Source: Sphaerodactylus townsendi
Taxonomy: Eukaryota
DNA length: 64,000 bases
Direction of reading: 5' to 3'
Assembly (NCBI RefSeq): GCF_021028975.2
Contig: NC_059439.1
Coordinates: forward strand, 26,350,001 to 26,414,000
Positions 4,973 through 24,651 of this stretch are shown piece after piece. Position numbers and translations under genes: made by a program. Each line of letters begins with the position of its first letter. Positions within the stretch are counted from its first letter, which is position 1. The notes below the pieces were generated by a model. It was not told the DNA's origin. It saw nothing but the letters and a program-made list of their open reading frames with translations, and ran no database searches.

Positions 4973-5043
4973 CTGTCTCTCACTCCCCTCTTCCTGACCT
5001 TGCTGCAGTCTTTCCAGTTCGCTCTGAATGCTGTTAAAAGAGG
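4973..5043 (-). CDS. RABEP2: RABEP2 exon 10 (ASFNSIQSELERLQQGQEEGSERQ)
   Basis: AG/GT sites, phase 1 to 0; resembles RABEP2 ASLCSLRTEMERVQQEQ. Confidence 0.85.
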
Positions 5044-5775
5044 CTGGGGATTGGGAGGGAGAAGAGAAGAGAAAGTCAAGCCCCTTCGGGCAGCATTGCA
5101 CACACCCAACTCTTCACGGACATGCAGGCACTTCCATCATATAAAACCAAACCAAAATCCTACCTTGCAAGAGTTCTTCCAGCCAGAAGTAGGGCAGGAA
5201 GGAGAAAAAAGAAAGGCAGTCAGTCACTTGCATCGCAGTGAAAAAGATATCTGACATTGCACCATCAAACCAAGATTGCTGGATTTTTTTAGTCCCAGCA
5301 CTTTCTGATTCCAGGAGCCTGTTCCTTTCCCAATAGCTCAGGGTCCCCAACCTTTCTCATTCTGCAGGCACCCTTTGAATTCCAACACAGGCTGGTGGGC
5401 TCACCCCAAAAATGGCTGCCAAAGGAGGGACAGCAAACCATAAAATGTCGTGAAGTTTTGCCCAATAAAAATATAACGACTGCGTTTTCCCGGCTATGTG
5501 GCCACGGTCTGGTGGTTTCAGCTCCTGACGTTTTGCCTGCATCTTTGGCTGGCACCGTCAGAGGCATGTCACAGTAAGATGCATTTCGTTCCGTGGCTCG
5601 TAGAATCATAGAGTTGGAAGAGTCCAGAAGGCCCATCAAGTCCAACCCCCTGCCATGCAGGAACACACAATCAAAGCAGTGTGGGGTGATTGTGTGGTGG
5701 GGTATATGCTTTGTTTACTTCACAGGTGGGGGTGGTGAGGTGTTTTTGCATGTGTCCAGGTTGCATTTGAACCAG

Positions 5776-6075
5776 GAGCAGCAGTGGCCTAGTGGCTAAG
5801 AGCAGTGGCTACGAGCAGGTGCACTCTGATCTGGAGGAACCGGGTTTGATTCCCCGCTCTGCCGCTTGAGATGTGGAGGCTTATCTGGGGAATTCAGATT
5901 AGCCTGTACACTCCCACACACGCCAGCTGGGTGACCTTGGGCTAGTCACAGCTTTTCGGAGCTCTCTCAGCCCCACCTACCTCACAGGGTGTTTGTTGTG
6001 GGGGGGAAGGGCAAGGAGATTGTAAGCCCCTTTGAGTCTCCTACAGGAGAGAAAGGGGGGATATAAATCCAAACT
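5776..6075 (+). mobile_element. Squam3/MIR-like SINE
   Basis: Full-length copy with A/B boxes. Confidence 0.85.
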
Positions 6076-6570
6076 AAAAAAACCCCCTCTGAAGTCACCA
6101 GTTATAGATGCGGGCAAAAAGGTTAGGATCAGAAACCACCAGACCACGGCCACACAGCAGGGAAAAACCACAACAGCCAGTTGATTTCAGACATGAAAGC
6201 CTTCAACAATACATCGAATAACAGCTCTGCAATGTTTTAGGCAGAAGATCTGCTTAACATTATGCCTTTCAAAATGAACAGAAAAAATATTTCCTTGCAT
6301 ACTCGCAGCCACCCTCGCATAGTCAATCAAATCTCCAGCGGCCAATCAGAAGCCCTGCTGAGCAAAAGCCCCACTTGGCTCCACCCACTTTCTTAAGACA
6401 CTTGTTGAGCACCTGGAAAGATGGAAAGTACCATTGTGCTTACGGCTGTCACACTGCTGGGCACTCTGAAAGGTGGAGGAGCTCATGGGTGCTACATTGG
6501 GAATCCCCTGCTCTAGTTGGACTGCCAAGCTTTACCACCATTGCTCTCTCTGAGCCTCGTTCCCGCCTAC

Positions 6571-6748
6571 CTCGTTCTTCTCGCTCTCCGTCCAGCTTCC
6601 CTTGCAGTTCAGACCGGGCGGCCATCTCTTGGTCTAGCCTCTCGCGCAGGGACACAATCTCTATCCGCAGACGCTCGGCCTGGTGCTCTGAACTGCGAAG
6701 CTGCGATTCGACTTCCAGTTTTTGCTGGCTCACCATGCTCTGCAGGTC
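6571..6748 (-). CDS. RABEP2: RABEP2 exon 9 (DLQSMV...EHQAERLRIEIVSLRERL...EREER)
   Basis: Rabaptin motif AERLRIEIVxLRE; AG/GT, phase 0 to 1; an alternative in-frame acceptor lies 33 nt upstream. Confidence 0.92.
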
Positions 6749-6819
6749 CTGGCCAAGGGAGACGACAGCCCCGTCCATCACCTGAGGATTCACAGCCCTC
6801 CCATGCTGATACCCCATAG

Positions 6820-7422
6820 CAGTGATGGCGAACCTATGGCACGGGTGCCAGAGGTGGCACTCGGAGCCCTCTCTGTGGGCACGCACACACAGAGTTCGTC
6901 ATGTGCAGGGGTAGGGAACCTGCGGCTCTCCAGATGTTCAGGAACTACAATTCCCATCAGCCTCTGTCAGCATGGCCAATTGGCCCATTGCTGGGCGAGA
7001 AACTGATAGGTGGATTCCTGGAAGAAACACTGGTCTGTCATGAGGCAGAAAATCACCCCCCACACACACACATCTAGGCTGGCCTTGGCCACTGAGCACG
7101 ACGTGTGAAAACCACGGTGAGTAGGGAGGACTCGGCTGGCAGGCCTGGTGCCTGTGCTCTGGGTGGCTGCTGCCTGGCGGGCGCGCAGAGGAGGCAGAGA
7201 TGCTAGAGAGGCACAGAGCAGTGTGCACGGGACTTGCTGGAGGCTAGAGCAGGCTGGCCTTTGCTCGAGCAGGTGGGGCAGAGGAAGAGGGAGCCAACCA
7301 GTTTTTTTCTAAACTAAAACCTCAGTATTCAGCTTTAATTGCCGTGTTGGCACTTTGCAATAAATAAGTGGGGTTTGGGTTGCAGTTTGGGCACTCGGTC
7401 TCGAAAAGGTTCCCCATCACTG
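6820..7422. mobile_element. Non-autonomous hAT (Charlie-like) element
   Basis: TIRs CAGTGATGGCGAACC; TSD CCCCATAG; relatives at 42182-42591 and 50459-50957. Confidence 0.85.
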
Positions 7423-7468
7423 CCCCATAGCTTCACTATGACACAAGCAGAGGACTGGTCAGCATTAC

Positions 7469-7600
7469 CTGGATGGGGGGCGGCAAGCGCTGCATCCTGC
7501 CAGCGGCATCTTGGGAAGAGGCTCTGCGCAACGCCTCGTTTTCACTGTTGAGGAGCTGCACTTCATAGCTAAGGCGCTTGTGCAATGCAGCCAGGTCAGC
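7469..7600 (-). CDS. RABEP2: RABEP2 exon 8 (ADLAALHKRLSYEVQLLNSENEALR...)
   Basis: Resembles AELVTTHKCLHHEVKRLNEENQGLR; AG/GT, 132 nt. Confidence 0.9.
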
Positions 7601-8352
7601 CTAGGAGGCAAGGGAAGAGGGAGATCAGAAGCACAGGGAACAAACACGACTAAAGCCCAGGAACTAGGCCGAGACAGACTTCTCAGGCCTAGGCGATGGG
7701 TTGGACTCAGTAGAAGGCAACTTCATGTGTTTAATGTGCTGCCCTGGGATGGAAAAGCAGCATGCCTCTGGGCCAGTGCAGAGGGTAAGGGGCTTTGTGC
7801 CCCCACCTAGCACAGCAGCTACAACAGCTTTGCACCCTCGCCTAACAAAGCAGCTACAACAAGGTTCCCCAGGAGGTTGGGGCTGGGGGGAGAGACTGTA
7901 ACACAAACTGGTTCTCTGACAACACTCATCCTCAACCTCTCCTCCCTCCTAAAACCACAGTTCTGGAAGCCCCTCCATTTGCTGCCCAGCCTTTTTCCTC
8001 TCTCTCTTTGAAGAAGAAGAGTTTCGATTTATGTCCCTCCTTTCTCTCCTGTAAGAAGGCTCAAAGGGGCTTACACTCTCCTTTCCCTTCCCCACCCCGG
8101 TGAGGTGGGTGGGGCCGAGAGAGCTCCGAGAAAAATGTGACCAGCTGGAATTGATTTTCATGGCTGGAATCAACTGGTCACCCAGCTGGCGTGCGTTAGA
8201 GTGCACAGGCTAATCTGGTTCCCCAGATAAGCCTCCACAGCTCAAGTGGCTGAGCGGGGAATCAAACCCTGTTCTCCAGATTAGAGTGCGCCTGCTCTTA
8301 ACCACTACGCCACTGCTGCTCCTTCCCAACACTAAACACCAGCCACACTCAC

Positions 8353-8451
8353 CAACTGCTCCTGAGTCTGTCGCTGGCTCTTGCTCATTGTGTTTTGGAG
8401 GCCCCGGAGAATCTCCTCGGAGCTTTTGACCTGACTGAAAAGAACCTGGAC
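8353..8451 (-). CDS. RABEP2: RABEP2 exon 7 (VQVLFSQVKSSEEILRGLQNTMSKSQRQTQEQL)
   Basis: Resembles MQVLLAQVQNSEQLLRTLQ; GTGAGT donor; tandem acceptor could add one Gln. Confidence 0.9.
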
Positions 8452-8550
8452 CTGCTCCAAGAGAGAAACAGCAGTCATGGAGCACAGGGCTGTCAGGAGA
8501 TAGATCCAAGATGGTTTTCAGCTGCCCCCCCAAGTGCCACCAATACAGAC

Positions 8551-8643
8551 CTGCCTGCAATCCTCGCTGCTGCATCTGAGAATCTCCTCCAAGTGGGCCT
8601 TTTCCTGAGATTTCTTCTCCACAGCCTCCCGATGCTGCCGCAC
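8551..8643 (-). CDS. RABEP2: RABEP2 exon 6 (VRQHREAVEKKSQEKAHLEEILRCSSEDCRQ)
   Basis: Resembles LRRSNEDCAKQ; AG/GT, phase 0. Confidence 0.85.
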
Positions 8644-9777
8644 CTGGAGGAAGAGATCGGGCCCGCAACAAGGGGAAGAGAGGATGAAGTTGCACATTTC
8701 CTACAGCCCAGCTTCTTGAGAGGGAGCTTGCCTCCTTCTCGGCACACAGTTCAAACCCCGACACCTCCAGTTAAAAAAGGCTCAAGTAATTATGTGGTGT
8801 GAAAGACCTAAACTTGAGACTCTGGAGGGCCGCTGTCAGTCTGAATAGCATATAGTGATCTTGACGGACCAATGGCCGGATTCAATATGCATCATGTGTT
8901 CCCCTCCCCCCCCTCTCTCACACACACAAATATTAAAGAAGAAGAAGGGTTTGGATTTATATCCTCCCTTTCTCTCCTGTAGGAGACTCAAAGGGGCTTA
9001 CAATCTCCTTGCTCTTCCCCCCATCACAACAAACACCCTGTGTGGTGGGTGGGGCTGAGAGAGCTCTGAAAAGCTGTGACTAGCCCAAGGTCACCCAGCT
9101 GGCGTGTGTGGGAGCATACAGGCTAATCTGAATTCCCCAGATAAGCCTCCACAGCTCAGTTGGCAGAGCAGGGAATCAAACCCAGTTCCTCCAGATGCAC
9201 CTGCACTTAACCACTACGCCACTGCTAAAGGATTAGCAGTTTTGGGAACAGTTGCAAAAACAGAAAGGGTTAGAGCAGGGGTAGGGAACCTGTGGCTCTC
9301 CAGATGTTCAGGAACTACAATTCCCATCAGCCCCTGTCAGCATGGCCAATTGGCCATGCTGGCAGGGGCTGATGGGAATTGTAGTTTCTGAACATCTGGA
9401 GAGCCGCAGGTTCCCTACCCCTGGGTTAGAGAATGCAGCCTATCAGAGCTCATTACCCAATGCAAATAAGGGTCAGGCTGGTGTTGTTTTTACAAGGGAG
9501 AATGAAACAGGAGAAAAAAAAGAAAAGCTATTAGCTAGCCCAGGCAGGTATGTATGTTCCGGGAAGGGGGAGTGCTTTGTGGTCCCCATCCACTAAAAAC
9601 ACAGGAGCATAATAGTACCCCCCTAAACAGAGTTACACCCTCCCAAAACCATTGAACCATTTCCATAGAATCAGAGTTGGAAGAGACCACAAAGGGCCAT
9701 CGTCCAACCCTCTTGCAGTCCACTGGGACTTCTCCTGCTCTCTAGGAGCTCTCAAAGATTATAGCAAGTGGACCAGA

Positions 9778-9917
9778 GGCTCCTTCCGCACATGCGGAAT
9801 AATGCACTTTCAAACTGCTTTCAGTGCTCTTGGAAGCTGTGCGGAATAGCACAATCCACTTGCAAACAGTGGTGAAAGTGGTTTGAAAATGCATTCTTTT
9901 GCGCGTGCGGAAGGGGC
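9778..9917. mobile_element. Palindromic PIF/Harbinger-like MITE
   Basis: TIR GGCCCCTTCCGCACATGCAGAATAATGC; more than 10 copies (e.g. 20383, 24367, 24877, 25957, 27881, 37350, 43701, 52927, 56661). Confidence 0.75.
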
Positions 9918-9997
9918 CAGAGATTACTTCCGCCAGTTCTTTTAATATCCTGGGATGCAGTTCATCAGGCCCTGAAGATTCGAATTCATTTAAAGTA

Positions 9998-10153
9998 NNN
10001 NNNNNNNNNNNNNNNNNNNNNNNNNNNNNNNNNNNNNNNNNNNNNNNNNNNNNNNNNNNNNNNNNNNNNNNNNNNNNNNNNNNNNNNNNNNNNNNNNNNN
10101 NNNNNNNNNNNNNNNNNNNNNNNNNNNNNNNNNNNNNNNNNNNNNNNNNNNNN
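9998..10153. other. Assembly gap
   Basis: Run of N. Confidence 1.
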
Positions 10154-10260
10154 AGCCTCTAATATTTAAAGGCATGCAATGTCTGAAAGGCTTCAAAAGA
10201 GGGCACTTGCCTGCACCCCGAAGCCTAGGCAGCCTTCTAGTCCCCCACACTCTCTTTTAA

Positions 10261-10480
10261 GAACATAAGAACATAAGAACATAAGAACAAGCCAGCTGGA
10301 TCAGACCAGAGTCCATCTAGTCCAGCTCTCTGCTACTCGCAGTGGCCCACCAGGTGCCTTGGGGAGCTCACATGCAGGATGTGAAAGCAATGGCCTTCTG
10401 CGGCTGTTGCTCCCGAGCACCTGGTCTGTTAAGGCATTTGCAATCTCAGATCAAAGAGGATCAAGATTGGTAGCCATAAA
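10261..10480 (-). mobile_element. CR1 LINE 3' end
   Basis: (ACATAAGA)n tail and 3' UTR shared with copies at 15233, 38401, 39866, 44463, 48526. Confidence 0.85.
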
Positions 10481-10514
10481 TAAATTGATAGCCTTTTCCT
10501 GCCCTTTCACACAC

Positions 10515-10829
10515 CTTGTTGTGAAGCTGCTTCCATTCTGAGTCAGGCACAAGCTGGTACCCAGCCGGCGGCAGGTAGATGGTCTCCGGTACCAGGGTAG
10601 CACTAGAGGAGGCAATTGACACCGTCTCAGGGCTGGCAGACCGTCTGCGGAGCATCGGGAGCCCAGGGCTTGGTACCAGCAAGGAAGAAGAGGCAATGGA
10701 GACACTGTCGAGGCCAGAAGCAAATTTTTCAGCCACTCCTCCTTCCTCCGGGGTAACATGGTCATCTCCTAGTCCATCGGGGAGCACTATGTCGACGAGC
10801 AGAGATTCAGATGAGCTGAAGAGGCCGTC
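10515..10829 (-). CDS. RABEP2: RABEP2 exon 5 (...TLVPETIYLPPAGYQLVPDSEWKQLHNK)
   Basis: Resembles TLVPEGIYLPPPGYQLVPDTQWEQL; 315 nt, AG/GT. Confidence 0.95.
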
Positions 10830-12920: not shown

Positions 12921-14451
12921 GGGGGGGGGGATGAATGAGTGCAGGGGTGGTCAACCCATCCTTACCTGTTTTCTTCATTATTATTATTATTTAATTGTGC
13001 TTTATTTTTTTATTTACCAATTTTGTACTTGAAACTCAAGGTGCATGCATGGCAAAAAGCAACGTCATTGAATAGCAGGAGGGATCTCATAAAGCAATGC
13101 AACAGAGCTGGGATTGCAAAAATTAGAAAAGTGCAAAAAAAGTTTCAAACATCCCAACACTCTCTCTCTCTCTCTCTCTCTCTCAATTAGGACCCTGTGT
13201 GTGTACAGATAGATAAATATGCGCTGATGTCCATGTTATAAACATAAACATTAATATTGTTCACTGCCGTTCCTAAAACACATGCTAAATATGCATTTTC
13301 CAATAACAGATATTTTATAGCTTAGTATTGATTGATTGATTGATTGATGGCAAGTCACAACACACACAGATTAGCACATGCTGGGGGGTAGGGGCTGGGC
13401 AATTGCCTGGGCCCTTTCTTGGGTCCTCATTGGCCCCCAGTACAAACTTATGAACTATGTGGCTGTTTGTGGGATTCCAGGAGGAAAAGGGAAGAGGAAA
13501 AAGTGCTGCGCTACAGATGCACCGTAAAAGCCCTATGGGATGAGGACTACAATAATGATGATAATTGGGGGGTGGGAGGGAAACCCTGGCTGGATCTAGC
13601 CCAGGGGTCTGCAACCTGTGGCTCTCCAGATGTTCATGGACTACAAATCCCATCAGCCCCTGCCAGCATGGCCATGCTGGCAGGGGCTGATGGGAATTGT
13701 AGTTCATGGACATCTGGAGAGCTGCAGGTTGCAGACCCCTGATCTAGCCAAACAGTAACTCTGCACAGAACTAAGCTGTGAAAATCTCAAGTTAATTTAG
13801 AAAACTCACCTCCTTTTCAGTTGTCCTGGCTTTGGAAGGGCGTCACTCTATTTGAGATTGTGCAGTGTATCATTTAACACCTTGTTTACGACTAGGGAGG
13901 TGGCTGGTTAGGAAGGGAGCATCCACAAGAACGGAAAGAGGCAAGGGATATCAGAGCATTAGAAATTATCTTGATCTAGGTTTCAAAAAACAATGCCAAT
14001 TTTTACATGCTGTCAAGTTTCCTGACTGTTTCAAGGCGACTAAATCATAAAAGTATCCTGCTACGTTTGCTCTTTCCAAGCTTGTTTATGGGAGTCTCAG
14101 TTTTCAAAATCCTAATTCGGGATACATTTGTAGCACTGAATCAGACAAAGATCTATGAACTCTAGAAGAGGAACTGAAAACCAACTTCACCCCTAGTTAG
14201 GAAATGAGGGATTTTCTGAATGCAGCCCAAAACCTCGGCCGCTTTTGAGCGGCTGGTGCCGTTGCACAAGTATTCACAAATGATGAGATTTTGGTCTGTT
14301 TGGCACTGTGGCTTTTAGTACCCTTGGCTTTTGAGTTTAGTTTGCAATATATAGAGAAGCCTCCCCTTCAAGCCCCTGTAGCCCACTCCTGCATTGACAG
14401 AGATCTTGCTGTTGTAAACAAAGGTACACACCAAGGTTGTGAGCAGGTGAA

Positions 14452-14457
14452 TTTATT
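14452..14457 (-). terminator. Putative polyadenylation signal of the I-domain gene
   Basis: AATAAA on minus strand about 155 nt after the stop at 14614. Confidence 0.6.
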
Positions 14458-14613
14458 GGTATCACAGGTGCATACATCGGCATTCCATCCCAAACCATGT
14501 AGGAGAGGATTTCATCGGCTGCCTTCTTCCATCCAGCTGGCTTGGAGCTTTCCTTCCCGTCAGCCATCTCCTGCTGTCGATCGTCTTACCAGCACCCACC
14601 GCTTGGCTCAGGA

Positions 14614-14774
14614 TCAGTGTTCACGCCCACATTTTTTGTTGGCCAGGGTGTCCAGTTTGGCACCGATTCTATCCAGGTCACTCAACACTTGCTCCAGTTT
14701 CCGTAGCACCTGTGGGTCCGGTGCGCAGGTACCAGGTGACTTGGGTGGAATGGGGGGCTGTGGAACCGCTGGGC
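14614..14774 (-). CDS. I-domain gene last exon: Pro-rich linker plus Cys-flanked coiled coil (GPAVPQPPIPPKSPGTCAPDPQVLRKLEQVLSDLDRIGAKLDTLANKKCGREH*)
   Basis: Acceptor TTCTTCTCTGTGCCCTTTCTAG; phase 1 fits the preceding exon; regular 4-3 hydrophobic repeat; polyA signal downstream. Confidence 0.75.
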
Positions 14775-14834
14775 CTAGAAAGGGCACAGAGAAGAAACTC
14801 ACATCAGTGCAACCACATCCTTGATCCAGCAAAA

Positions 14835-15776
14835 TCAGTGTATTTCTATAGTAATCAGGCAATCATGAAATGGCGCTGACTTGTTCCCCTTCGGGCTGTC
14901 CCTTACTAGTTGTTTTCAGGATGAGTGCGAATGGCTCCTCAGCCAATACGCCCCTACACCCCTCAGTTTGGACCTTCTACCGTTGGGAGAAGAGTCGAGT
15001 TCCTCCGGCCGGGAGAAACTATTGTTTGGGATCAGTTCTCTGGAGCTCGTTCAGAGACGTCCGTCAGCCGCCATTCCTTAACCGCCATTCATTATCTTTC
15101 TATATTTTTTTCTTTCTCTTTTTCTTTTCCTCTCCCCCCCCCCTTTTTTTCTTCTTCTTTATAATAAGTTAAGAAATGTTCAAGAAACTAAAGGATGACC
15201 CTTCGGGGTTTGAATATACTATATGTAAACAACCAGGGGGCATCCATTGAAAATGCTGGGGGGAAGAATTAGGACTAATAAAAGGACACACTTCTTCACG
15301 CAACGTGTGATTGGTGTTTGGAATATGCTGCCACAGGAGGTGGTGATGGCCACTAACCTGGATAGCTTTAAAAGGGGCTTGGACAGATTTATGGAGGAGA
15401 AGTCGATTTATGGCTACCAATCTTGATCCTCTTTGATCTGAGATTGCAAATGCCTTAACAGTCCAGGTGCTTGGGAGCAACAGCCGCAGAAGGCCATTGC
15501 TTTCACATCCTGCATGTGAGCTCCCAAAGGCACCTGGTGGGCCACTGCGAGTAGCAGAGAGCTGGACTAGATGGACTCTGGTCTGATCCAGCTGGCTTGT
15601 TCTTATGTTCTTATGTGCTATGTAGGAATGAGACATACAGTATCATAGCACTAGATTTGCTTGCCAATTTAATGTACGACAAGGGCATGCTTGTTCATAC
15701 CCTACTATGTTCTTAGTGTGTTTATTTTTGTTTGTCTATGTCTCTTTTTGCATTTTAAACAATAAAACATTTATTA
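14835..15776. mobile_element. Retroelement-like insertion with nested CR1 fragment (about 15233-15613)
   Basis: Flanked by 15-bp direct repeat CTTGATCCAGCAAAA (14820-14834, 15777-15791); AATAAA near the right end. Confidence 0.6.
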
Positions 15777-16607
15777 CTTGATCCAGCAAAACCAGAAGTG
15801 GCAGAACAGAGTATTTCCACCGGATGACCACTGATGCTAGTGTTGGGGGTAACCAAAAGGATCTTACCATTGGAACGCCTTCCTTTTGGGGAAAGCCTGT
15901 AGTGTTCTTTGTTCTTAAGTCAGTGGGGGACGGGGACATGATAAAAGCTGGAGATAATGGAGAAAGCCGGAACGAGTGGAAAGAAAGAATTGTTTCTCCC
16001 TAGCCCATAATCTGAACTACTCTCAATTTTGGCAAGGCATTGAGACAAGCGGTAGATTCAGGAGAGACAAAAAGGAAACACTGCTGCTAGTGTTTTAATG
16101 TTTAATTTATTTATTGTTTTAACTGAAACTATTTGTTGTATTCAAATGTTGATTGGTTTGTGAACCGCCCTGAGCCCTTCAGGGGTAGGGCAGTCTATTA
16201 AATTTAATAAATAATAATTATTATTATTAATTACTCATTCAGAAACCTTTATTAGGCATATACAACATGGGGGGGGGGGGAGGAAAGAGTAAATTCAACA
16301 GAGAACAGTGAAAATAGTGTGAACAGAAGCCAAGGGAACCTAGTTCGAAGTGCGTTATCAGTTTTTTATACCCTGCTTTTCTTCCCAATAGGATCTCAAA
16401 GCAGTTTGCAATCTTGCTCTCGCCTCCTTCATTGTGTCCTCACAAAAATCTGTGAGGTAGGTTAGGTTGAGAGAAAGTGGCTGCCGCAGGGTTACCCAAT
16501 GAATTGCCATGGCTGAGTGGGGATTAAAAACTGGGTCTCCCAGATTCCAGACTCATACACTTCACCACTACACCACACTGGCTGTCCTTCAAAAGAAACC
16601 ATACAAC

Positions 16608-17182
16608 CAGGGGTGGGATCCAAACATTTTAGTAACAGGTTCCCTTGGTGGTGGGATTCAAACAGTGGTGTAGCGCCAATGGGGCTGGGCGGAGCACAAG
16701 GGGGGCGTGGCCAGGAATTCCAGGGGCGGGGCATTAATAATTTCTCTGTTACTGTAAAAAACTCTTACTGTAAAAGAAAAGTTCCTAATTTCCAGCTGCT
16801 ATCTTTCTGTCCATAATTTAAACTCATTATAGCAAGTCCTATCGTCTACTGCCAACAGAAACAACTACTTCTCCTCTAATTGACTTTTCAAATACTTAAT
16901 TTTGTTTCTAGAAATCAAAAGAAGGAGACTTTCCTTAAACAAGGGACTTTACCATATTTCCAAAACATGTTTTTAAAACAGCCCAACAGGGAGAATTATC
17001 CCGTTTTCTACCTTCGCTAACCAGCCACATCGGAAACAACAGGACTTTATGATTTTTGGACCTAATGGAATTTCTAACGGAAAAGCAGACCCAATTAGTA
17101 ACCCCCCCCCCCCCTTGGCACACACAAATAATTAGTAACCCCCTCTCGGGAACTAGTGAGAACCTGCTGGATCCCACCTCTG
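16608..17182. mobile_element. Non-autonomous hAT element
   Basis: TIRs; TSD CATACA(A/G)C. Confidence 0.9.
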
Positions 17183-17496
17183 CATACAGCATATAATTAA
17201 TGTATATAATTCACTGCCTCTAGATGTGATGCGTGCCTCATGGATCTCCAAGCAGGGCACCAAATGACCCGCCTCTTTAAGCACAGAAAATCCTATTTTG
17301 CCTGCCACCCCAGGGCTTCTGCTATTGCACCAGGCAGGCATAGATCACAATACTTTGTCAGCTATGGTTGCTGCTGAAAACTTTTGATCTGGGAGGGGGA
17401 AGGGAAATAAATTATACAGTGGCATTTAAAAAGCCACCCGCTTCTAACTTCTAGATATAGAATCTCCCACCGTACCTCTCTCGCCGGTCACTGTAC

Positions 17497-17647
17497 CACG
17501 TCTGGAACAAATTTTCTCTTGCAGTTGGCGAGCGGTGTCCTGGAGGTCTGTGAAGTGACGCGCGTGCAGTATGTGCTGCGTGGCAGGACGGGAGGCCATG
17601 GCGTTGAGCTCCTGTACTGCAGTCGTGCTTATGAAGCCCAGCCCAAC
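17497..17647 (-). CDS. Integrin alphaM/X-type I domain exon D (VGLGFISTTAVQELNAMASRPATQHILHARHFTDLQDTARQLQEKICSRR)
   Basis: Aligns with alphaM VGDAF...QELNTIASKP...QLREKIF; 151 nt, phase 0 to 1. Confidence 0.9.
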
Positions 17648-19021
17648 CTTCCAAAGAGAAACACAATCAATAAGAGGCACCAAACTGTTCCTTAGAGAGC
17701 TACCAGCCTTGGAAGGACTAGCTCAGGGGTAGGGAACCTGCGGCTCTCCAGATGGCCATGCTGACAGAGGCTGATGGGAAGTGTAGTTCCTGAACATCTG
17801 GAGAGCCGCAGGTTCCCTACCCCTGGACTAGCTTAAGGACTAGACTATCTTAGGCTGATTCCGCATGGGCCAAAAACAGCAGTGTGAAAATGGTGTAAAA
17901 GGATTTAAAATGGTGTAAAAGGGTTTATACTGTTTTAACACCATTTTCACATCGCTGTTTTTGGCCCGTGCGGAATCAGCCTTATGCATGCACTACTTAC
18001 CATGCAGCTATTTGCTTTGCAATGTGGTTTCTCGCAGTTTCTTGTTTGCGCTGGGATTCTCCCCGTGAACTGCCCCTAACCAAGCCGAGCCATCATTTTG
18101 CCCCCCGCCCCTCACCCACTTCCATGTTGTTTCCGTGCAACCTCCATTTGGGGAGGTTGCCTGCCGCTTTCCCCCGCTACCGTCTTTGGTCTAGCAGCCT
18201 AGTGTTAGTTTACGAGGGCACGTCAATTTCTTGTCAATTTCACTGGGTCTATCATTCCGAGGATAGACCCTCAGCATGAAAATAAAAAGAAAGAAAGCCC
18301 TTCTAATCCTTCTGAAAGGGTGGCCTGAAAAGAGAGGAAGGAACCTGTGCAGGACCTGCTACTACTGAGCATGCACAGAGAGCAAAGGTACGCCAGCAGT
18401 GGCCTAGGAGGTTAAGAGCTCGTGTATCTAACCTGAAAGAACTGGGTTTGATTCTCCACTCTGCCACCTGAGCTGTGGAGGATTATCTGGGGAATTAGCC
18501 TGTACACTCCCACACACGCCAGCTGGGTGACCTTGGGCTACTCACAGCTTCTCGGAGCTCTCTCAGCCCCACCCACCTCACAGGGTGTTTGTTGTGAGGG
18601 GGGAAGGACAAGGAGATTGTAAGCCCCTTTGAGTCTCCTGCAGGAGAGAAAGGGGGGATATAAATTCAAACTCTTCTTCTTCTTCTTTGCACATGGGCTG
18701 AGATAGGAGAAGGATGGCACAGCTAGATGGTTCAAAGAGAATCCTTCTAGAGCTCTGAGTAGTTGGTCCAGTTTCTTATGGCTGGATCCATCCTGTTGCT
18801 TGCCTTCCATGTGCTGTCCTAGGCTTCCTTGGAACTCTGCCCCCCACCCTGACTCTGATTTTGGTGAGATCATAATTGTTCCTGACAGGTGACAACGTGG
18901 AAAAGCAACCTGATGCATGACTGCTGCTCAATAGATCCCTATTCAATTCATCACTTTTCCGAGACATCTCCATTCTTATGTCTCTGTGGCCCCTTCCGCA
19001 CATGCAGAATAATGCACTTTC

Positions 19022-19455
19022 AATCCCCATATTGCCCCGGTAGGCCCCTCCGCTCCACGGAGGAGGACCTACTCGTGATCCCTGGCCCAAAAATGATCAG
19101 GCTGGCCTTGACGAGAGGCAGGGCCTTTTCAGCCCTGGCCCCTACCTGGTGGAACAGACTCCCTAGGGAGATCAGGGCCCTGCGGGACTTACAGAGTTTC
19201 CGCAGGGCCTGCAAGACGGACCTGTTCCGCCAGGCGTTTGGCCAGCCTGGTTAAAAATATATCTACTGTGTCATCTGGCCACCCATGGGCACAAAAGGGC
19301 GGAGGGGAGTAGCCAGACGCCATCCACATTTTTAAATGGGTTGTGTTTTTAAGTAACTGATATTTAAATTATGTTTTAATGTATGTGTTAACCTTGTTGT
19401 GAACCGCCCTGAGCCCTTAGGGGGAGGGTGGTATATAAAACAAATAAATAAAATA
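19022..19455 (+). mobile_element. L2 LINE 3' fragment nested in a Harbinger-like MITE
   Basis: ORF2 C-terminus RAFSALAPTWWNRLP...FRRACKTDLF; tail GTGAACCGCCCTGAGCC...(AAAT)n. Confidence 0.8.
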
Positions 19456-19756
19456 AATCTACTTTCAATGCACTTTGCAGCTGGATTTTACTGTGCGGAA
19501 TAGCAAGATCCACTTGCAAACCATTGTGAAGGTGGATTGAAAGTGCATTATTCTGCACGTGCGGAAGAGGCCTGAGTGGCGACACCCTGGAGACTCTTCC
19601 CCCCCCCCCCCCGTCTTCATCTCCACGCCAAGAAGTTGGGACCTCAAAGCCGCATATTCTAGACAAAATCTGCCGTCGTCAAATTGCACTCCAAAGATCC
19701 TGCCTTGTGGTGAAAGAAGGGAATTGGATGGGGAAGAAGAGATAGCTGGGCCTCAC

Positions 19757-19910
19757 CCCAACTGCAAAGCGCACGACTCCAGCTCTCTCTGCTGCTTCGA
19801 CAACCTCTGCGTAGTCTAAGGGGTCCCCAGTTTTCAGCCCATCTGTCACTATCACCAGAATCTTGGTGGCTGTGTTGCGGGCGCCTCTGTGAGGAACGAG
19901 CAGATCTCTT
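19757..19910 (-). CDS. I domain exon C (RDLLVPHRGARNTATKILVIVTDGLKTGDPLDYAEVVEAAERAGVVRFAVG)
   Basis: Aligns with alphaM GARKNAFKILVVITDGEKFGDPLGY; MIDAS Asp in TDG; 154 nt, phase 2 to 0. Confidence 0.95.
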
Positions 19911-20137
19911 CTAAACAGGAGAGAAGAGAGGAATACGGTATGAAGAGATCCAGAAACGCCCATTAATGTTACCAACTTTTAAACTGGGAACGGCACCGCC
20001 GGGGGTCCTGAGGCAAAACGTTTCCCCATTGCTGCATCTTTGCAGCAGCCCGTGATGAACTCCTGCCCCACCAGAAGAGGAAGAGGAGCAGGCCACTGTA
20101 CAGGAGGAGAAGGCGAAAACAGAGCAAGGTTACCCAC

Positions 20138-20283
20138 GTGGCATGCCGGATGGCAGACGCTGTGTGTGTGGTGCCTCCCAGCTGTTTAACCTGGCTGAGC
20201 AGGTGATCCGGGTCGGGATTTCTCTGGAAATGCTTGAAGTCAAAATGCTCCTGAAAACGGCTTGAATACTGCAGGAGGGAGAA
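20138..20283 (-). CDS. I domain exon B (FSLLQYSSRFQEHFDFKHFQRNPDPDHLLSQVKQLGGTTHTASAIRHAT)
   Basis: Aligns with alphaM FSLMQYSEEFRIHFTFKEFQNNPNP...THTATGI; MIDAS Thr; 146 nt, phase 0 to 2. Confidence 0.95.
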
Positions 20284-21126
20284 CTGGAGAGGATGGGGAG
20301 AAATTAGCGGGAAGGGAGAGACCTTTAACTGAGTATCTACCTTGCTTGAATCAGCTTGTTGTGTAATCCACCTGAAGTCTCAGGCCCCTTCCGCACCCGC
20401 AAAATAATGCGTTTTCAAACCACTTTCACAACTGTTTGCAAGTGGATTTTGCTATTCCGCCCAGCTTCAGAGAGCACTGAAAGCAGTTTGAAAGTGCATT
20501 ATTCTGCATGTGCGGAATGAGCCTCAGTGGGAAAGGTGGGCTACAAAATAAACCTGGGAAGTTTTTGCAATTTTGAATTGGCTTCCAGCGCACGGCCCTA
20601 CAGTTAAGTTGCCTAGCCATCATTTCCCTTGTGAAGTTCTAAGCCTATACAGTTATAAGGGAACTTGATGAACAACTGAATAGCAGTGTTATTATTCAAG
20701 TTTCCTTTGTTTTCCTTTTTATATTTCTGGTTTCTGTTTTGAATTTTATTGACTCGTTCCTAGTTCTGTTTTTGTTCCTGTGGGGAGGCTTGATCAAAGG
20801 TGCCCCCCCCCCCCCGGTGGATGTAAAATAATAGCTGGGTAGTGTTCTGACATATAATAGCACCCACCTCAAGGCCGTGGAAACCAAACTGGACTGGTCA
20901 CATCTTTTGGAGGGAGGGAATTATGCGAATAAGTTAGCAATGTAAGCTTTCTTCTGTCCAGCAACTAAATATTTTGGGCATACCATAATTTCTTTTTTTA
21001 AAAGACTATTACTAATTTAAACGGCATCACGGTGGCTAATGTTGCACTTTGACCTGAAGTCCAACCTGTTTCAAAACCTTGGCAATAAGTAAGAACCGAG
21101 CACACCTTCTACCCCATTGCTAGTAC

Positions 21127-21254
21127 CTGTGTATTGTTGGGAAAGCTTTTCATGGTGTGTGTAACAAAGTTCTTCAGATGCATGAATTCTGAGGATCGCA
21201 TGCTGCTTGAACCATCGATCACAAAGATGATATCTCGGGCATCATTTGGACACC
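21127..21254 (-). CDS. I domain exon A (CPNDARDIIFVIDGSSSMRSSEFMHLKNFVTHTMKSFPNNTQ)
   Basis: DxSxS MIDAS motif (DGSSS); aligns with alphaM CPQEDSDIAFLIDGSGSI; phase 1 to 0. Confidence 0.95.
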
Positions 21255-22149
21255 CTACAAGGAAACAGAGCAGAGAAGATCTTTCAAAAGCAAAACCATT
21301 CCCTTCATTCATAAGACTGGCCTGCATCCTATGCAGGGACGTCCAACTGTGGCCCTCAGATATTCATGGACTACAATTCCCAGCAGCCTCTGGGGCAGAT
21401 GGGAATCGTAGTCCACGAACATCAGGAGGCCCACAGTTGGACGCGCCTGCATAGGCCATTGAGTGACTGTAGCCTAGTGGTTCGGCGCATGGTTTGGATC
21501 CTGAGGGTCCTAGTTTCAATCTTAGGCACATCCTAGTTTCAAGCTTAGGCACATCCTAGTTTCAATCTTTGGCGCATCTAGTTAAACTATTTATTAGACT
21601 GGCAAATAACCTCAATGTGACAGTGCCACGGGATTTAATTTAAACTAGGGTTGGTAATTTTTGTTCCTTGGCGGATTTAGGCAAATCTCCCCATCGCTAA
21701 ACTCCCCGTCAGGAAAAGCTTCATTTGTTATTCTCACAGACCTTAATGACAGAGGAGCCCCATTGCCAACCCTTTGGCAACTTTGGCTCACCTGCACTAC
21801 CTGTTTTCAGTGCCACAACCTATGCCCGGAAGAGTCAAAAGAGGAATGTTCTGAGTGTCTTTTTAATCCACCAAACCTATTCCTGAAGTTAACAGTCCAT
21901 GAATGCTTAAACACACGTTTAAATAGCATTTGAACCTGGCCATGGATCTTTCAAGGTTTCTTCTAGTGATGAAGGAATCACCAGTTTCCTTGAAGCCCCG
22001 TTTAAGAGCTTGCCAGCTTTACCAAAGGAGGAGGGTTGGATGAGCTGTTAATGAAAGATGCAACAGTGGTTATTCTCCACCGTTTCTATAACCCGCAATC
22101 CTAAATTAAACACCTGTGCCTTTCGTCATTATTTTGTCTGGAATCCATT

Positions 22150-22537
22150 CCCTATGAGGGGAGCTGGGTATGTTTAGTTTGATGAAGAGAAGGTTAAGAG
22201 GTGACATGGTAACCATGTTTAGATATTTGAAGGGATGTCATGTTGGTGAGGGAGCAAGCTTGTTTTCTGCTGCTCCAGAGACTGGGACCAGGAGTCATGG
22301 GTTCAAGGTGAAGGAAAAGAGATTCCACTTAAACATTAGGAAGAACTTTCTGATTGTCAGGGCTGTTTGACAGTGGAATTCACTGCCTCAGAGTGTGGTG
22401 GAGTCTCCTTCTTTGGAGGTTTTAAACAAAGGCTGGATGGCCATCTGTCAGGAGTGCTTTGATTCTGTGTTCCTGCATTGCAGGGGATTGGACTTGATGG
22501 CCCTTGGGATCTCTTCCAACTCTATGATTCTATGATT
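22150..22537 (+). mobile_element. CR1 LINE 3' fragment
   Basis: FSLMKRRLRGDM...FHLNIRKNF; (TTCTATGA)n tail. Confidence 0.9.
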
Positions 22538-22617
22538 AAAACTTTTCTCCCAAATTCCCTTCATTGGAACACGTAACACTCCATCCCATCCAACCTTTCC
22601 CCAAACCCTTTGCTTAC

Positions 22618-22695
22618 GTCCTTTCTCCTTGTTTCCTTGTGGGAGTTCTGGCCCAGCTAAAGCATCCGAGAGATCAAAACCATCATCAACAGACT
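22618..22695 (-). CDS. I-domain gene exon 2: acidic CD99-like peptide (ESVDDGFDLSDALAGPELPQGNKEKG)
   Basis: Acceptor TTTCCCCTCTCACAG, donor GTAAGC; symmetric phase 1-1, joins signal exon to I domain in frame. Confidence 0.75.
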
Positions 22696-22924
22696 CTGTG
22701 AGAGGGGAAAATGGGGTGAGAAGGGGCCAAGAACATCAATGGGCCACAGACAGAAACACAACTTACCATAACATGGCTCTGAAGATTTCAGCTTTAGATA
22801 CAGGTGAAATGTTTAGAAGCAAAACTACCGGATCGTGGCCACACAGCCCAGAAAACCCACAATGCTCAGTGTTTGTTCGATGCTTTAAGACATACTAGAT
22901 ACATGAAAAGATACAACTGATATA

Positions 22925-23316
22925 CAGTGGTGGGATCCAAAAATTTTAGTAACAGGTTCCCATGGTGGTTGGATTCAAACTGTGGTGTAGCGCCAATGGG
23001 GCTGGGTGGGGCACGACGGGGGCGTGGCCGGGCATTCCGGGGGTGGGGCATTCCTGGGCGGGGCTGTGGCAAGGATGCAGCTGCTGCGCCGGTCCTTGGG
23101 CGGGAAACGAATGCCCACAGGCACAGGCTGCCACGCACGCCAGTGCACCTCCTGCTAGACTGCTTCAAGTTCTGCGCGCTACTGCTGAGAGGAGGGGCAT
23201 AACTAAGGCAAAAATCACGTGGCAAAATCACCAATTAGTAACCCCCTCTCGGCACACACAAATAATTAGTAACCTACTCTCGGGAACCTGTGAGAACCTG
23301 CTGGATCCCACCTCTG
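22925..23316. mobile_element. Non-autonomous hAT element inside a ~30-bp tandem repeat
   Basis: TIRs; TSD CTGATATA. Confidence 0.9.
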
Positions 23317-23667
23317 CTGATATACTAGATACATGAAAGGATACAACTGATATACTAGATATATGAAAAGATAAAACTGTCCTGTACAATGTGATTTATC
23401 ATCAGTGATTCAAAATAAGCCTCACCAGCACCTAGAGTAGCCTCCACAGCGTATGAAATAGCAGGCTGTGTTCTGAACGGGCCCTTTACATCCACTTGCG
23501 CACATTTGCATGGATGTATGTTAGAGAAAAGGTCTCTTTGCTACCTTAAGCAGAGATTTAGCTTCTGAAGAATGGCAGCACCAGCAATTTACTCAAAATC
23601 TTTTCACGTGGCCTGCCCCAACCTATAGCACTTACCCCATCTAACCTTTTCTAAACCCTTTGCCTAA

Positions 23668-23748
23668 GTCTTGTCCCCTTGTTTCTTTGTGGGAGTTTTG
23701 ACTCAGTTAAAATATCTCTGAGATCAAAATCTGTGAGGTCAAAAAGAC
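23668..23748 (-). pseudogene. Duplicated copy of exon 2 with inactivated donor (pseudo-exon)
   Basis: ESFDLTDFDLRDILTESKLPQRNKGTR; flanks homologous to the 22618-22695 exon; donor GTAAGC changed to TTAGGC. Confidence 0.65.
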
Positions 23749-23833
23749 TCTGAGAGACAGGAAAATAAGGCGAGAATGTGCCAAGAACATTTTGATGCTA
23801 AGAAGATCAGGAAGAAATCACCTCAGCCCAGAG

Positions 23834-24190
23834 CAGTGGTTCTAAACCTTCCTAATGCCGCGACCCTTTAATATAGCTCCTCATGTTGTGGTGACGCCCA
23901 ACCCTAACATTTATCCATTTTACAGATGGAGAACACTGATGCAGAGTCTTAGACGACCCCTGTGAAAGTCTGGTGGTGGGATCCAAAAATTTTAATAACA
24001 GGTTCCGATGGTGGTGGGATTCAAACAGTGGCGCCGCCGCACACACACACCTCCAGTCCCTATTGGGCAGGGAGGTTGCTTTAGTAACCCCTTCTCGGCA
24101 TTCAGAAAAAATTAGTGACCACTTCTAGAGAAGTGGTGAGAACTGGTTGGATCCCACCTCTGGTCCCGGCCCACAGGTTGAGACCCGCTG
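23834..24190. mobile_element. SPIN-like non-autonomous hAT with a nested second hAT MITE (about 23971-24161)
   Basis: Ends CAGTGGTTCTAAACCTTCCTAATGCCGCGACCC and CCCACAGGTTGAGACCCGCTG; TSD GCCCAGAG. Confidence 0.8.
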
Positions 24191-24599
24191 GCCCAGAGGA
24201 AAGGATACCAGCAATAAGGAACAGATTAGCTCTCTAACTTGCTGGGAAAATTCCAGGTGGGCTATTGCCCTGGAGGCTACCAGTGGCCTGAACCAAGAAG
24301 AGCCAAGCCTCTTTTACACGGGCAACAGTACTGAAGCCCCACAACTCAGACCTGGTAACCCTCATAGGCCCCTTCCACACATGCAGAATAATGCACTTTC
24401 AATCCACTTTCAATGCACTTTGCAGCTGTGCGGAATAGCAAAATCCACTTGCAAACGATTATGAAAGTGGATTAAAAGTGCATTCTCCTGCACGTGCGGA
24501 AGGGGCCCTAGTCCTGATTCTCATTAACTCCTGGCCAGCCTGCTCTGATCATTTTAATTTTTCAGTCCATACTTTCTATAGGGGGGAGCCGCTTCCTAC

Positions 24600-24651
24600 C
24601 TGCTGTCCCAAAGAGAAGGAGGGTGACGATGAAGACTGCAAACGCTCCCAT
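24600..24651 (-). CDS. I-domain gene exon 1: signal peptide (MGAFAVFIVTLLLFGTA)
   Basis: Kozak GCCATGG, hydrophobic core, donor CAG|GTAGGA, phase 1. Confidence 0.8.

What the first reader, a model, noticed from the sequence alone, without database searches (positions are those of the whole stretch)
14614..24651. Secreted stand-alone leukocyte-integrin I domain fused to a coiled coil: candidate novel exon-shuffled gene
Seen: seven exons (24600-24651, 22618-22695, 21127-21254, 20138-20283, 19757-19910, 17497-17647, 14614-14774) with canonical splice sites join in phase into an intact 870-nt CDS (289 aa) with Kozak ATG, stop and polyA signal. It encodes a signal peptide, short acidic peptide, I domain with complete MIDAS (DGSSS, T, TDG), Pro-rich linker and coiled coil. 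No FG-GAP/propeller, leg, TM or GFFKR exons were found, and neighbouring genes bound the locus on both sides. Known: the domain resembles the alphaM/alphaX (CD11b/c) I domain in sequence and, as recalled, intron positions; ITGAL/M/X/D share the mammalian 16p11.2 region with RABEP2; I domains bind iC3b, fibrinogen and ICAMs, normally within a beta2 heterodimer. Inference: the phase 1-1 I-domain module was shuffled into a matrilin-like soluble oligomer that could act as a multivalent decoy, opsonin-binding or matrix protein. Automated annotation would probably call it an integrin fragment.
Basis: partly seen in the sequence, partly recalled or inferred. Interest (0 to 1): 0.92.

Follow-up and report, generated by a model that had tools for sequence, protein, structure and literature searches.

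The report
Secreted stand-alone integrin I-domain gene
Lizards and snakes carry a small conserved gene that took the ligand-binding "I domain" out of a leukocyte integrin (CD11b/c type) and made it a secreted protein with its own signal peptide and a short self-associating tail; databases mislabel it "integrin alpha-M-like" and I found no study of it.

Summary
Seven minus-strand exons with GT-AG borders join into an intact 870-nt ORF. It encodes a signal peptide, an acidic peptide, an I/VWA domain with a full MIDAS, a Pro-rich linker and a Cys-flanked helix.

The window is Sphaerodactylus townsendi. RefSeq already models this locus as XP_048373914.1 "integrin alpha-M-like" (296 aa).

The gene is real:
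- More than 25 squamate species (geckos, skinks, lacertids, iguanians, anguimorphs, an amphisbaenian, snakes) have orthologues with the same architecture.
- Four species checked have the same neighbours, a His_Phos_2 gene and RABEP2.
- Two intronless RNA-type contigs from other squamates carry the spliced form.
- Pairwise dN/dS is 0.17-0.32.

The four I-domain exons have the same phases (1|0|2|0|1) and nearly the same lengths as exons 6-9 of a canonical 30-exon CD11-type integrin. No propeller, leg or transmembrane exon lies in the 64 kb.

The family lacks the integrin internal-ligand Glu and has an invariant Cys at the end of helix α7. A tail trimer model scored 0.40 against 0.06 for the best control.

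Ligand, tissue and true oligomer state are untested, and no RNA data exist for this species. It is a new variant of a known kind and appears unstudied.

The parts
24600..24651 (-). Exon 1: start codon and signal peptide (17 codons plus 1 base, ends in phase 1). By homology the 5' UTR extends to at least 24741.
   Evidence: Translation and Kozak context. 100% match to P0157 residues 1-17. Gecko mRNA contig L002 nt 1-140 aligns to 24741-24600.
22618..22695 (-). Exon 2 (78 nt, phase 1-1): conserved acidic peptide with the motif FDLSDAL.
   Evidence: GT-AG borders. F24 is invariant and D25, L26, D28 and A29 are nearly invariant in 16 orthologues. L002 nt 138-222 aligns here.
21127..21254 (-). Exon 3 (128 nt): start of the I domain, with invariant Cys45 and the MIDAS DGSSS loop.
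   Evidence: Pfam VWA E=1.3e-07. Matches alphaM from residue 128. Corresponds to canonical integrin exon 6 (131 nt), entered in phase 1.
20138..20283 (-). Exon 4 (146 nt): I-domain segment that includes the MIDAS Thr/Ser (residue 125).
   Evidence: Pfam VWA E=1.5e-05. Same length and phase as canonical exon 7. Residue table.
19757..19910 (-). Exon 5 (154 nt): I-domain segment with the MIDAS Asp158 (TDG).
   Evidence: Pfam VWA E=1.2e-06. alphaM E=4e-13. Same length and phase as canonical exon 8.
17497..17647 (-). Exon 6 (151 nt): end of the I domain, helix alpha7 ending K-I-C233. A second in-frame GT donor at 17476 (RefSeq model) would add 7 residues.
   Evidence: alphaX E=1.3e-05 over residues 1-47. 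151 nt equals canonical exon 9. The short donor is used in L002, Rhineura and Thamnophis. The long donor is used in P0157 and P0155.
14614..14774 (-). Exon 7 coding part: Pro-rich linker, Cys260, a helix of about 3.5 heptads (264-290), Cys292 and the stop codon.
   Evidence: heptad residues and both Cys nearly invariant. AF2 helix 264-290. Trimer model 0.40 against best control 0.06. No Pfam or PDB relative.
14442..14613 (-). 3' UTR with the AATAAA signal at 14452-14457.
   Evidence: L002 aligns through to 14442 and itself ends just after AATAAA.
23668..23749 (-). Dead duplicate of exon 2 inside intron 1. The acceptor is kept, the donor GT is changed to TT, and there is an in-frame TGA.
   Evidence: L002 nt 160-221 aligns at 80.6% identity. 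Sequences compared.

Best explanation
This is a real, conserved squamate gene. It encodes a secreted stand-alone CD11b/c-type integrin I domain. [quoted passage not shown] A flexible Pro-rich linker and a Cys-flanked helix of about 3.5 heptads follow.

Shown: the gene structure; its conservation, synteny and purifying selection; splicing in related species; the I-domain fold; and the absence of every other integrin part.

Inferred: the four-exon, phase 1-1 I-domain cassette of a CD11-type integrin was copied within the same linkage group and acquired new 5' and 3' exons, no later than the squamate ancestor. The product is secreted. The tail helix makes a parallel homo-oligomer, modelled here as a trimer, possibly disulfide-linked. 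The invariant Cys45 and Cys233 tie the N terminus to the end of helix alpha7, replacing regulation by a beta subunit. Several MIDAS sites together then bind acidic residues on ligands with avidity, in the manner of a humoral receptor or matrix adaptor. The ligand is unknown; iC3b and fibrinogen, the ligands of the parent domain, are the first guesses.
For: - The ORF and splice sites are intact.
- The RefSeq protein P0157 (XP_048373914.1) is identical over the exons.
- Orthologues of 282-308 aa (one model 327 aa) occur across Squamata, and their I-domain tree follows squamate phylogeny.
- The order His_Phos_2 | gene | RABEP2 is conserved in Sphaerodactylus, Paroedura, Thamnophis and Rhineura.
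- Intronless contigs of 1162 and 961 nt from SRR6291277 and SRR6291286 carry the spliced CDS. The first aligns to the window in seven blocks at the exon borders.
- dN/dS is 0.17-0.32 overall, 0.16-0.27 for the I domain and 0.11-0.46 for the tail.
- Of 11 listed exon substitutions in two close relatives, 9 are synonymous.
- Exon lengths 128/146/154/151 and phases 1|0|2|0|1 compare with 131/146/154/151 and the same phases in a canonical 30-exon integrin.
- Foldseek places the model on alphaM I domains: TM 0.92, rmsd about 1.6 A, 44-46% identity.
- All five MIDAS positions are intact in 20 of the 24 sequences that cover them.
- Three copies of the tail scored 0.40 against a best control of 0.06, with in-register a/d contacts at 266, 270, 273, 277, 280, 284 and 287. 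The runs agree in at least 93% of contacts and partner pLDDT is at least 63.
Against: - No RNA run holding this stretch was found, so expression of this particular copy and its exon-6 donor choice are unproven.
- Secretion is read from the sequence only; no signal-peptide predictor was available.
- The oligomer is a model result. It was calibrated on two-copy cases, and the tool states that a pass supports binding but does not show it. Trimer, dimer and tetramer were not compared.
- One Cys at each end of the helix cannot all pair within a trimer.
- The MIDAS Asp is replaced in Crotalus adamanteus and C. tigris (G), Tiliqua (K) and Hemicordylus (A, plus D57H). Metal-dependent binding is therefore not essential everywhere, unless these are sequence errors.
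- The Cys45-Cys233 bond could not be measured because model coordinates are not exposed.
- The AF2 model is only moderately confident (mean pLDDT 70).
Confidence: 0.72

Rival explanations
1. It is a decaying partial duplicate of a CD11-type integrin (a pseudogene or exon debris), and the signal-peptide and tail exons are chance ORFs stitched on by the reader and by gene predictors.
For: Only four integrin exons are present. No RNA run was found for this species. A dead duplicate of exon 2 lies in intron 1. A few lineages have lost MIDAS residues.
Against: The ORF is intact, with the same seven-exon layout, from geckos to snakes. Exon 2 and the tail are conserved at motif level. dN/dS of the N-terminal part is 0.34-0.45 and of the tail 0.11-0.46. 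Spliced mRNA-type contigs from two other squamates carry UTRs and a polyA signal.
Confidence: 0.03
2. It is part of a larger gene: either a mis-split full integrin whose other exons lie outside the window, or a fusion with RABEP2 as in the Protobothrops model P0024.
For: P0024 (498 aa) joins the first I-domain exons to RABEP2. Podarcis raffonei has longer predicted isoforms of 365 and 453 aa.
Against: The gecko mRNA contig has its own 5' UTR, ATG, stop and AATAAA. The upstream neighbour is on the opposite strand, 2.6 kb from the ATG. The canonical integrin is a separate 30-exon gene 3.6 Mb away in Paroedura. P0024 lacks exon 6 and the tail, as expected of a prediction error on a 161-kb scaffold.
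Confidence: 0.04
3. It is a real secreted I-domain protein, but it acts as a monomer or as a partner of another protein. In this reading the tail helix binds a different coiled-coil protein, or the Cys residues tether it to another chain, and there is no homo-oligomeric multivalency.
For: The helix is short, about 24 residues. One Cys at each end does not fit a closed trimer. The complex test was calibrated on pairs and on microbial proteins. No homology to any known oligomerising coil was found.
Against: The a/d positions (Val/Leu) are conserved in all orthologues. The homotrimer model is in register and scores 0.34 above the best control. The protein-language-model features lie nearest to short matrilin isoforms, which oligomerise through such a tail.
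Confidence: 0.18
4. The gene is not a squamate invention. It is an old tetrapod paralogue of the CD11 integrins that was lost in other lineages.
For: In the free tree the family sits outside all tetrapod canonical CD11-type I domains, on a long stem (0.55-0.76 changes per site).
Against: Holding the family together with the squamate canonical integrins is not rejected and scores slightly better (AU p=0.557). Both the tail-only and the whole-protein searches found squamates only. Those searches see only predicted proteins of 0.55-1.75 times the query length that share 5-residue words with it.
Confidence: 0.2

Closest known systems
I (inserted) domain of the leukocyte integrins alphaM/alphaX/alphaD (CD11b/c/d)
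   Same: Fold and sequence match: 44-46% identity, TM 0.92. The MIDAS motif D-x-S-x-S...T...D is present. The four-exon structure has identical phases and nearly identical lengths. The gene lies in the same linkage group as the canonical gene.
   Different: The domain is not inserted in a beta-propeller. There are no FG-GAP, thigh, calf, TM or GFFKR parts. The internal-ligand Glu of the IFAIEG motif is replaced by H, R or Q in every member, and the Phe by an invariant Cys. The protein has its own signal peptide, acidic peptide and coiled-coil tail.
Matrilins, especially short isoforms (VWA domain plus C-terminal coiled coil)
   Same: The overall design is the same: a secreted VWA domain on a flexible linker, with a Cys-flanked C-terminal oligomerising helix. 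The nearest clusters by language-model features are matrilin-3a isoform X4 (0.95) and cartilage matrix protein (0.94).
   Different: There are no EGF repeats. Pfam Matrilin_ccoil does not hit the tail at E up to 10, and no matrilin coil appears among PDB hits at E up to 10. The VWA domain is closest to CD11 I domains and shares their exon structure. The resemblance is in how it would work, not in descent.
VWF A1/A3-type VWA domains with an N-to-C terminal disulfide
   Same: One Cys lies a few residues before strand beta1 and another right after the last helix. In VWF A domains such a pair clamps the two termini (my recollection of VWF; not tested here).
   Different: Sequence identity is much lower than to CD11 I domains: VWF A1 appears only at E about 0.02 for exon 3. 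The disulfide in this protein is inferred, not shown.

Membership tests
Integrin alpha subunit (alphaI-containing, CD11 type) | Seven-bladed beta-propeller (FG-GAP repeats) carrying the I domain between blades 2 and 3 | tested here: not met
   tblastn of eight full-length or near-full-length integrins on the 64-kb window hits only the four I-domain exons. The precomputed Pfam domains of the family list only VWA-type families (VWA, VWA_2, VWA_3, VWA_CoxE) and no integrin domain.
Integrin alpha subunit (alphaI-containing, CD11 type) | Thigh/calf leg domains, transmembrane helix and GFFKR cytoplasmic motif | tested here: not met
   No such exons are in the window. The protein ends 59 residues after the I domain, in a hydrophilic tail.
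Integrin alpha subunit (alphaI-containing, CD11 type) | Conserved internal-ligand Glu after helix alpha7 (IFAIEG), which engages the beta-subunit MIDAS (PMC12422189) | tested here: not met
   Position 236 is H, R or Q in all 23 family members that cover it, and E in the three canonical integrins aligned. Four further canonical squamate integrins also keep KIFAIEG.
Integrin alpha subunit (alphaI-containing, CD11 type) | I domain with MIDAS (D-x-S-x-S, T, D) | tested here: met
   D57, S59, S61, T125 and D158 are present in the window's protein. All five positions are intact in 20 of the 24 sequences that cover them.
VWA / I-domain superfamily (Pfam PF00092) | Rossmann-like alpha/beta VWA fold recognised by the family profile | tested here: met
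   Exons 3, 4 and 5 each score above the Pfam VWA cut-off. The AF2 model superposes on alphaM I domains at rmsd about 1.6 A.
Matrilins | Matrilin-type C-terminal coiled coil (PF10393) | tested here: not met
   No PF10393 hit for exon 7 at E up to 10. No matrilin coil among PDB hits at E up to 10.
Matrilins | EGF-like repeats between the VWA domain(s) and the coil | tested here: not met
   No EGF family was reported for any exon. The linker has no Cys pattern.
Matrilins | VWA domain of matrilin descent | tested here: not met
   The best sequence and structure matches are CD11 I domains, and the exon structure equals that of a CD11-type integrin. No matrilin sequence was aligned directly.

The most novel reading that the evidence does not exclude
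Squamates have a humoral counterpart of complement receptor 3/4. It would be a secreted, disulfide-clamped, coiled-coil-oligomerised CD11-type I domain that recognises iC3b, fibrinogen or damaged-protein ligands in solution without any beta2 subunit. Its conformational state would be fixed by the Cys45-Cys233 clamp. Its conserved N-terminal acidic FDLSDAL peptide would act as a built-in pseudo-ligand that occupies the MIDAS until displaced. That would be the first natural free-standing integrin alphaI domain, and a new class of soluble innate-immune recognition molecule.
Probability: 0.15. Interest if true: 0.85.

Novelty: new variant of a known kind. Interest (0 to 1): 0.66.

Why it matters
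To my knowledge, integrin alphaI domains are known only as inserts in alpha subunits, where a beta subunit controls them through the internal-ligand Glu. Here the same domain has been kept under purifying selection as a free secreted protein across crown squamates (to my knowledge some 200 million years).

It has lost that Glu and has gained a Cys at the end of helix alpha7 and an oligomerising tail. This is a natural experiment on how an I domain works without a heterodimer. It is also a textbook case of phase 1-1 module shuffling, with exon lengths preserved to the nucleotide, and a candidate lineage-specific innate-immune or matrix protein.

There is a practical point too. RefSeq names it "integrin alpha-M-like", and in Zootoca and Pogona plain "integrin alpha-M". 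Such names can mislead orthology tables and expression studies of CD11b in reptiles.

Tried and rejected
- **RNA evidence in this species.** The look-up of sequencing runs (kind rna) returned only DNA-type contig runs of the source species and two relatives. Read laying could therefore show substitutions but no junctions.
- **Joined model.** Exons were searched one by one by reference. Full-length work used database proteins that those searches returned.
- **Origin of the tail and of exons 1-2.** No Pfam or PDB relative was found. There was no similarity to the canonical integrin locus, to RABEP2 or to the rest of the window. The origin is unresolved.
- **Rooting the I-domain tree.** With collagen VI and alphaE as outgroups, the alphaE branch (length above 4) fell inside the gecko sequences, a long-branch artefact. 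I dropped the outgroups.
- **Timing of the duplication.** This is not resolvable: the AU test does not reject a squamate-stem origin (p=0.557).
- **Literature.** Five full-text searches and two papers on alphaI-domain evolution gave no description of a free-standing CD11-type I domain. The run accessions of the two mRNA contigs appear in no held paper, so the tissue and species of those runs are unknown to me.
- **An ORF at 47510-48073.** I first took it for an RPS9 retrocopy from its Pfam hits. It is IMP3.
- **Cys45-Cys233 distance.** Model coordinates are not exposed, so it could not be measured.


Full report
**Observation.** On the minus strand the seven stated exons all have AG acceptors and GT donors. 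Their phases chain without a break, and they join to 870 nt, which is 289 codons ending in TGA. The start codon sits in a gccATGG context. An AATAAA lies 157 nt after the stop. The locus contains no N runs.

Joining was done only inside scripts, for the frame check and for dN/dS.

**What the exons encode.** Exons 3, 4 and 5 each pass the Pfam VWA cut-off on their own. Against solved structures, exons 3, 5 and 6 match integrin alphaM and alphaX I domains best (E down to 4e-13). AlphaE and alphaL are far weaker. Exon 7 has no relative in Pfam or the PDB.

**Identity of the locus.**
- A HMMER scan of 1.84 billion representative proteins with exon 5 found a 291-aa Crotalus protein with the same layout.
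- Searching with that protein found about 20 squamate proteins of 282-327 aa, all auto-named "integrin alpha-M/X/D-like".
- One of them, P0157 (XP_048373914.1, Sphaerodactylus townsendi, 296 aa), is 100% identical to the window over every exon. The window is therefore S. townsendi, and RefSeq already models the gene.
The two sites are 21 nt apart, in frame, and both are GT.

**Is it a real gene?** Five lines of evidence say yes.
1. *Distribution.* Intact orthologues occur in geckos (Sphaerodactylus, Paroedura, Eublepharis), skinks, a cordylid, lacertids, an amphisbaenian, iguanians, anguimorphs and many snakes. Their I-domain tree follows squamate phylogeny, and the family forms one clade with 100% SH-aLRT support.
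2. *Synteny.* In Sphaerodactylus, Paroedura, Thamnophis and Rhineura the gene lies between a His_Phos_2 gene on the opposite strand and RABEP2 on the same strand.
3. *Transcripts.* The Logan assemblies of SRR6291277 and SRR6291286 hold contigs of 1162 and 961 nt that carry the CDS without introns.
   - The first, from a gecko by similarity, has a 5' UTR, ATG, stop and a terminal AATAAA.
   - It aligns to the window in exactly seven blocks: 24741-24600, 22698-22617, 21254-21127, 20286-20141, 19910-19755, 17648-17496 and 14775-14442.
4. *Selection across species.* Pairwise NG86 dN/dS among the window, Paroedura and the two mRNA contigs is 0.17-0.32 overall. By region it is 0.16-0.27 for the I domain, 0.11-0.46 for the tail and 0.34-0.45 for the N-terminal part.
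5. *Selection among close relatives.* Contigs of two close relatives laid on exons 4-7 show 11 listed exon substitutions, 9 of them synonymous, and no frameshift. That list is partial, because the tool shows only the best-supported differences.

No RNA run holding this stretch was found, so expression of this particular copy remains inferred.

**Exon shuffling.** I mapped the exact exon structure of the canonical CD11-type integrin of Paroedura (P0226). It has 30 exons, lies next to COX6A2, and sits 3.6 Mb from the small gene on the same chromosome.

| | I-domain exon lengths (nt) | Intron phases |
|---|---|---|
| Canonical integrin (exons 6-9) | 131/146/154/151 | 1, 0, 2, 0, 1 |
| Small gene, window and Rhineura (exons 3-6) | 128/146/154/151 | 1, 0, 2, 0, 1 |

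- The donor at 17497 is thus the ancestral border of the cassette. The 17476 donor of the Sphaerodactylus and Paroedura RefSeq models is either a gecko alternative or a prediction choice.
- Exons 1, 2 and 7 also start or end in phase 1.
- Full-length integrins hit nothing else in the 64 kb.
- Exons 1, 2 and 7 show no similarity to the canonical locus, to RABEP2 or to the rest of the window, so their source is unknown.
- In at least 12 species the small gene and the canonical integrin lie on the same chromosome-sized record.

**Timing.** In the free tree the family lies outside all tetrapod canonical I domains, on a long stem. A tree that joins it to the squamate canonical integrins is not rejected and is marginally better (AU p=0.557). 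Searches with the whole protein and with the tail alone found squamates only. Those searches see only predicted proteins of similar length that share short exact words with the query. A squamate or lepidosaur origin is my preferred reading (about 0.7), but it is not shown.

**Protein anatomy** (alignment of 16 orthologues; residue table of 27 family and 3 canonical sequences).
- *Signal peptide.* A hydrophobic N terminus is followed by small residues at positions -3 and -1. I read this as a signal peptide by eye; no predictor was available.
- *Acidic peptide.* The conserved motif FDLSDAL is encoded by exon 2.
- *MIDAS.* D57, S59, S61, T/S125 and D158 are all intact in 20 of the 24 sequences that cover them. 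The Asp at 158 is replaced in Crotalus adamanteus and C. tigris (G), Tiliqua (K) and Hemicordylus (A, which also has D57H).
- *End of helix alpha7.* Canonical integrins read K-I-F-A-I-E-G. The Glu is the internal ligand for the beta subunit (PMC12422189). Every member of the small family reads K-I-C-x-x-[H/R/Q]-G instead. The relay to a beta subunit is therefore gone.
- *Possible clamp.* An invariant Cys233 appears at the spot where, as I recall, VWF A domains carry the Cys that bonds to one just before strand beta1. Here that partner would be the invariant Cys45. I infer a clamp joining the N and C termini but could not measure it.
- *Tail.* After a Pro-rich linker of 25-30 residues come Cys260, a helix with Leu at heptad a positions and Val/Leu at d positions, and Cys292.

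**Structure models.**
- AlphaFold2 with the family alignment gives a moderately confident I domain (block pLDDT 70-91), disordered segments 1-42 and 238-262, and a helix at 264-290.
- Foldseek places the model on alphaM I domains with TM 0.92, rmsd about 1.6 A and 44-46% identity. AlphaL and alphaE score about 30% identity.
- Three copies of residues 250-296 scored 0.40 against 0.06 for the best of three controls. The runs agree in at least 93% of contacts, and partner pLDDT is at least 63.
- The contacts are parallel and in register at residues 266, 270, 273, 277, 280, 284 and 287.
- The tool states that this supports but does not show binding, and that its calibration was on two-copy cases. 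I did not compare dimer, trimer and tetramer.

**Comparison with known families.**
- It is not an integrin alpha subunit. It lacks the propeller, legs, TM segment, GFFKR motif and internal-ligand Glu, all tested here and not met.
- It is a member of the VWA/I-domain superfamily, and by descent a CD11-type I domain.
- It would work like a short matrilin: a VWA head on a flexible stalk with a Cys-flanked coil. The protein-language-model search puts it nearest to matrilin-3a short isoforms (0.95).
- It shows no sequence kinship to matrilin coils, and its VWA domain is not of matrilin type.
- I found no paper describing it.

**Verdict.**
- *Shown:* this is a conserved squamate gene, expressed in relatives, that encodes a stand-alone CD11-type I domain and was built by shuffling a phase 1-1 four-exon cassette.
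- *Inferred:* secretion, homo-oligomerisation, the disulfide clamp and MIDAS-dependent multivalent binding.
- *Unknown:* ligand, tissue and physiological role.
- *Novelty:* the gene exists in databases only as a mis-named automatic prediction, so it is a new variant of a known kind rather than an unannotated locus.

Noticed in passing
window 23668-23749 (-): A degenerate tandem copy of exon 2 with its flanks lies inside intron 1, about 1 kb upstream of the real exon 2. The acceptor is kept, the donor GT is changed to TT, and there is an in-frame TGA in phase 1. It is a dead pseudo-exon.
   Followed up: partly
window 17476-17497 (-): Two in-frame GT donors lie 21 nt apart at the end of exon 6. 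The upstream one is ancestral and is used in a related gecko's mRNA; the downstream one is used in the RefSeq models of Sphaerodactylus and Paroedura. In the long-form frame, two substitutions in one close relative are synonymous and one in another relative is not. This may be alternative splicing that adds 7 residues to the linker.
   Followed up: partly
window 47510-48073 (-): An intronless 187-aa ORF has Ribosomal_S4 and S4 domains. Its best PDB match is the U3 snoRNP protein IMP3 (E=1.3e-90 over the full length), so it is the single-exon IMP3 orthologue and not a ribosomal-protein retrocopy.
   Followed up: yes
window 4988-10823 (-), and from 27282 upward (+): The neighbours are RABEP2 exons downstream of the gene (tblastn with the RABEP2 part of P0024) and a 397-aa His_Phos_2 (histidine acid phosphatase family) gene placed head-to-head upstream. 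In Paroedura, TUFM follows RABEP2, as I recall it does in human 16p11.2.
   Followed up: partly
orthologues P0017, P0159, P0154, P0153 (not in the window): The MIDAS Asp corresponding to D158 is replaced in Crotalus adamanteus and C. tigris (G, though not in C. horridus), in Tiliqua (K) and in Hemicordylus (A, together with D57H). These are either independent losses of metal binding or sequence errors.
   Followed up: no
RefSeq names of orthologues: In Zootoca vivipara (XP_034990161.2) and Pogona vitticeps (XP_020648469.3) the ~290-aa protein is now named plain 'integrin alpha-M'. In Protobothrops the gene is fused to RABEP2 in a single model (P0024). These annotation errors could mislead orthology calls.
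   Followed up: no
window 15082-19737, introns 5 and 6: Several intron stretches draw extremely high summed contig depth in all four runs (about 2e5 to 3e7, against roughly 15-300 in the unique exon-bearing bins) and many repeat-type joints. They are interspersed repeats filling the introns.
   Followed up: no
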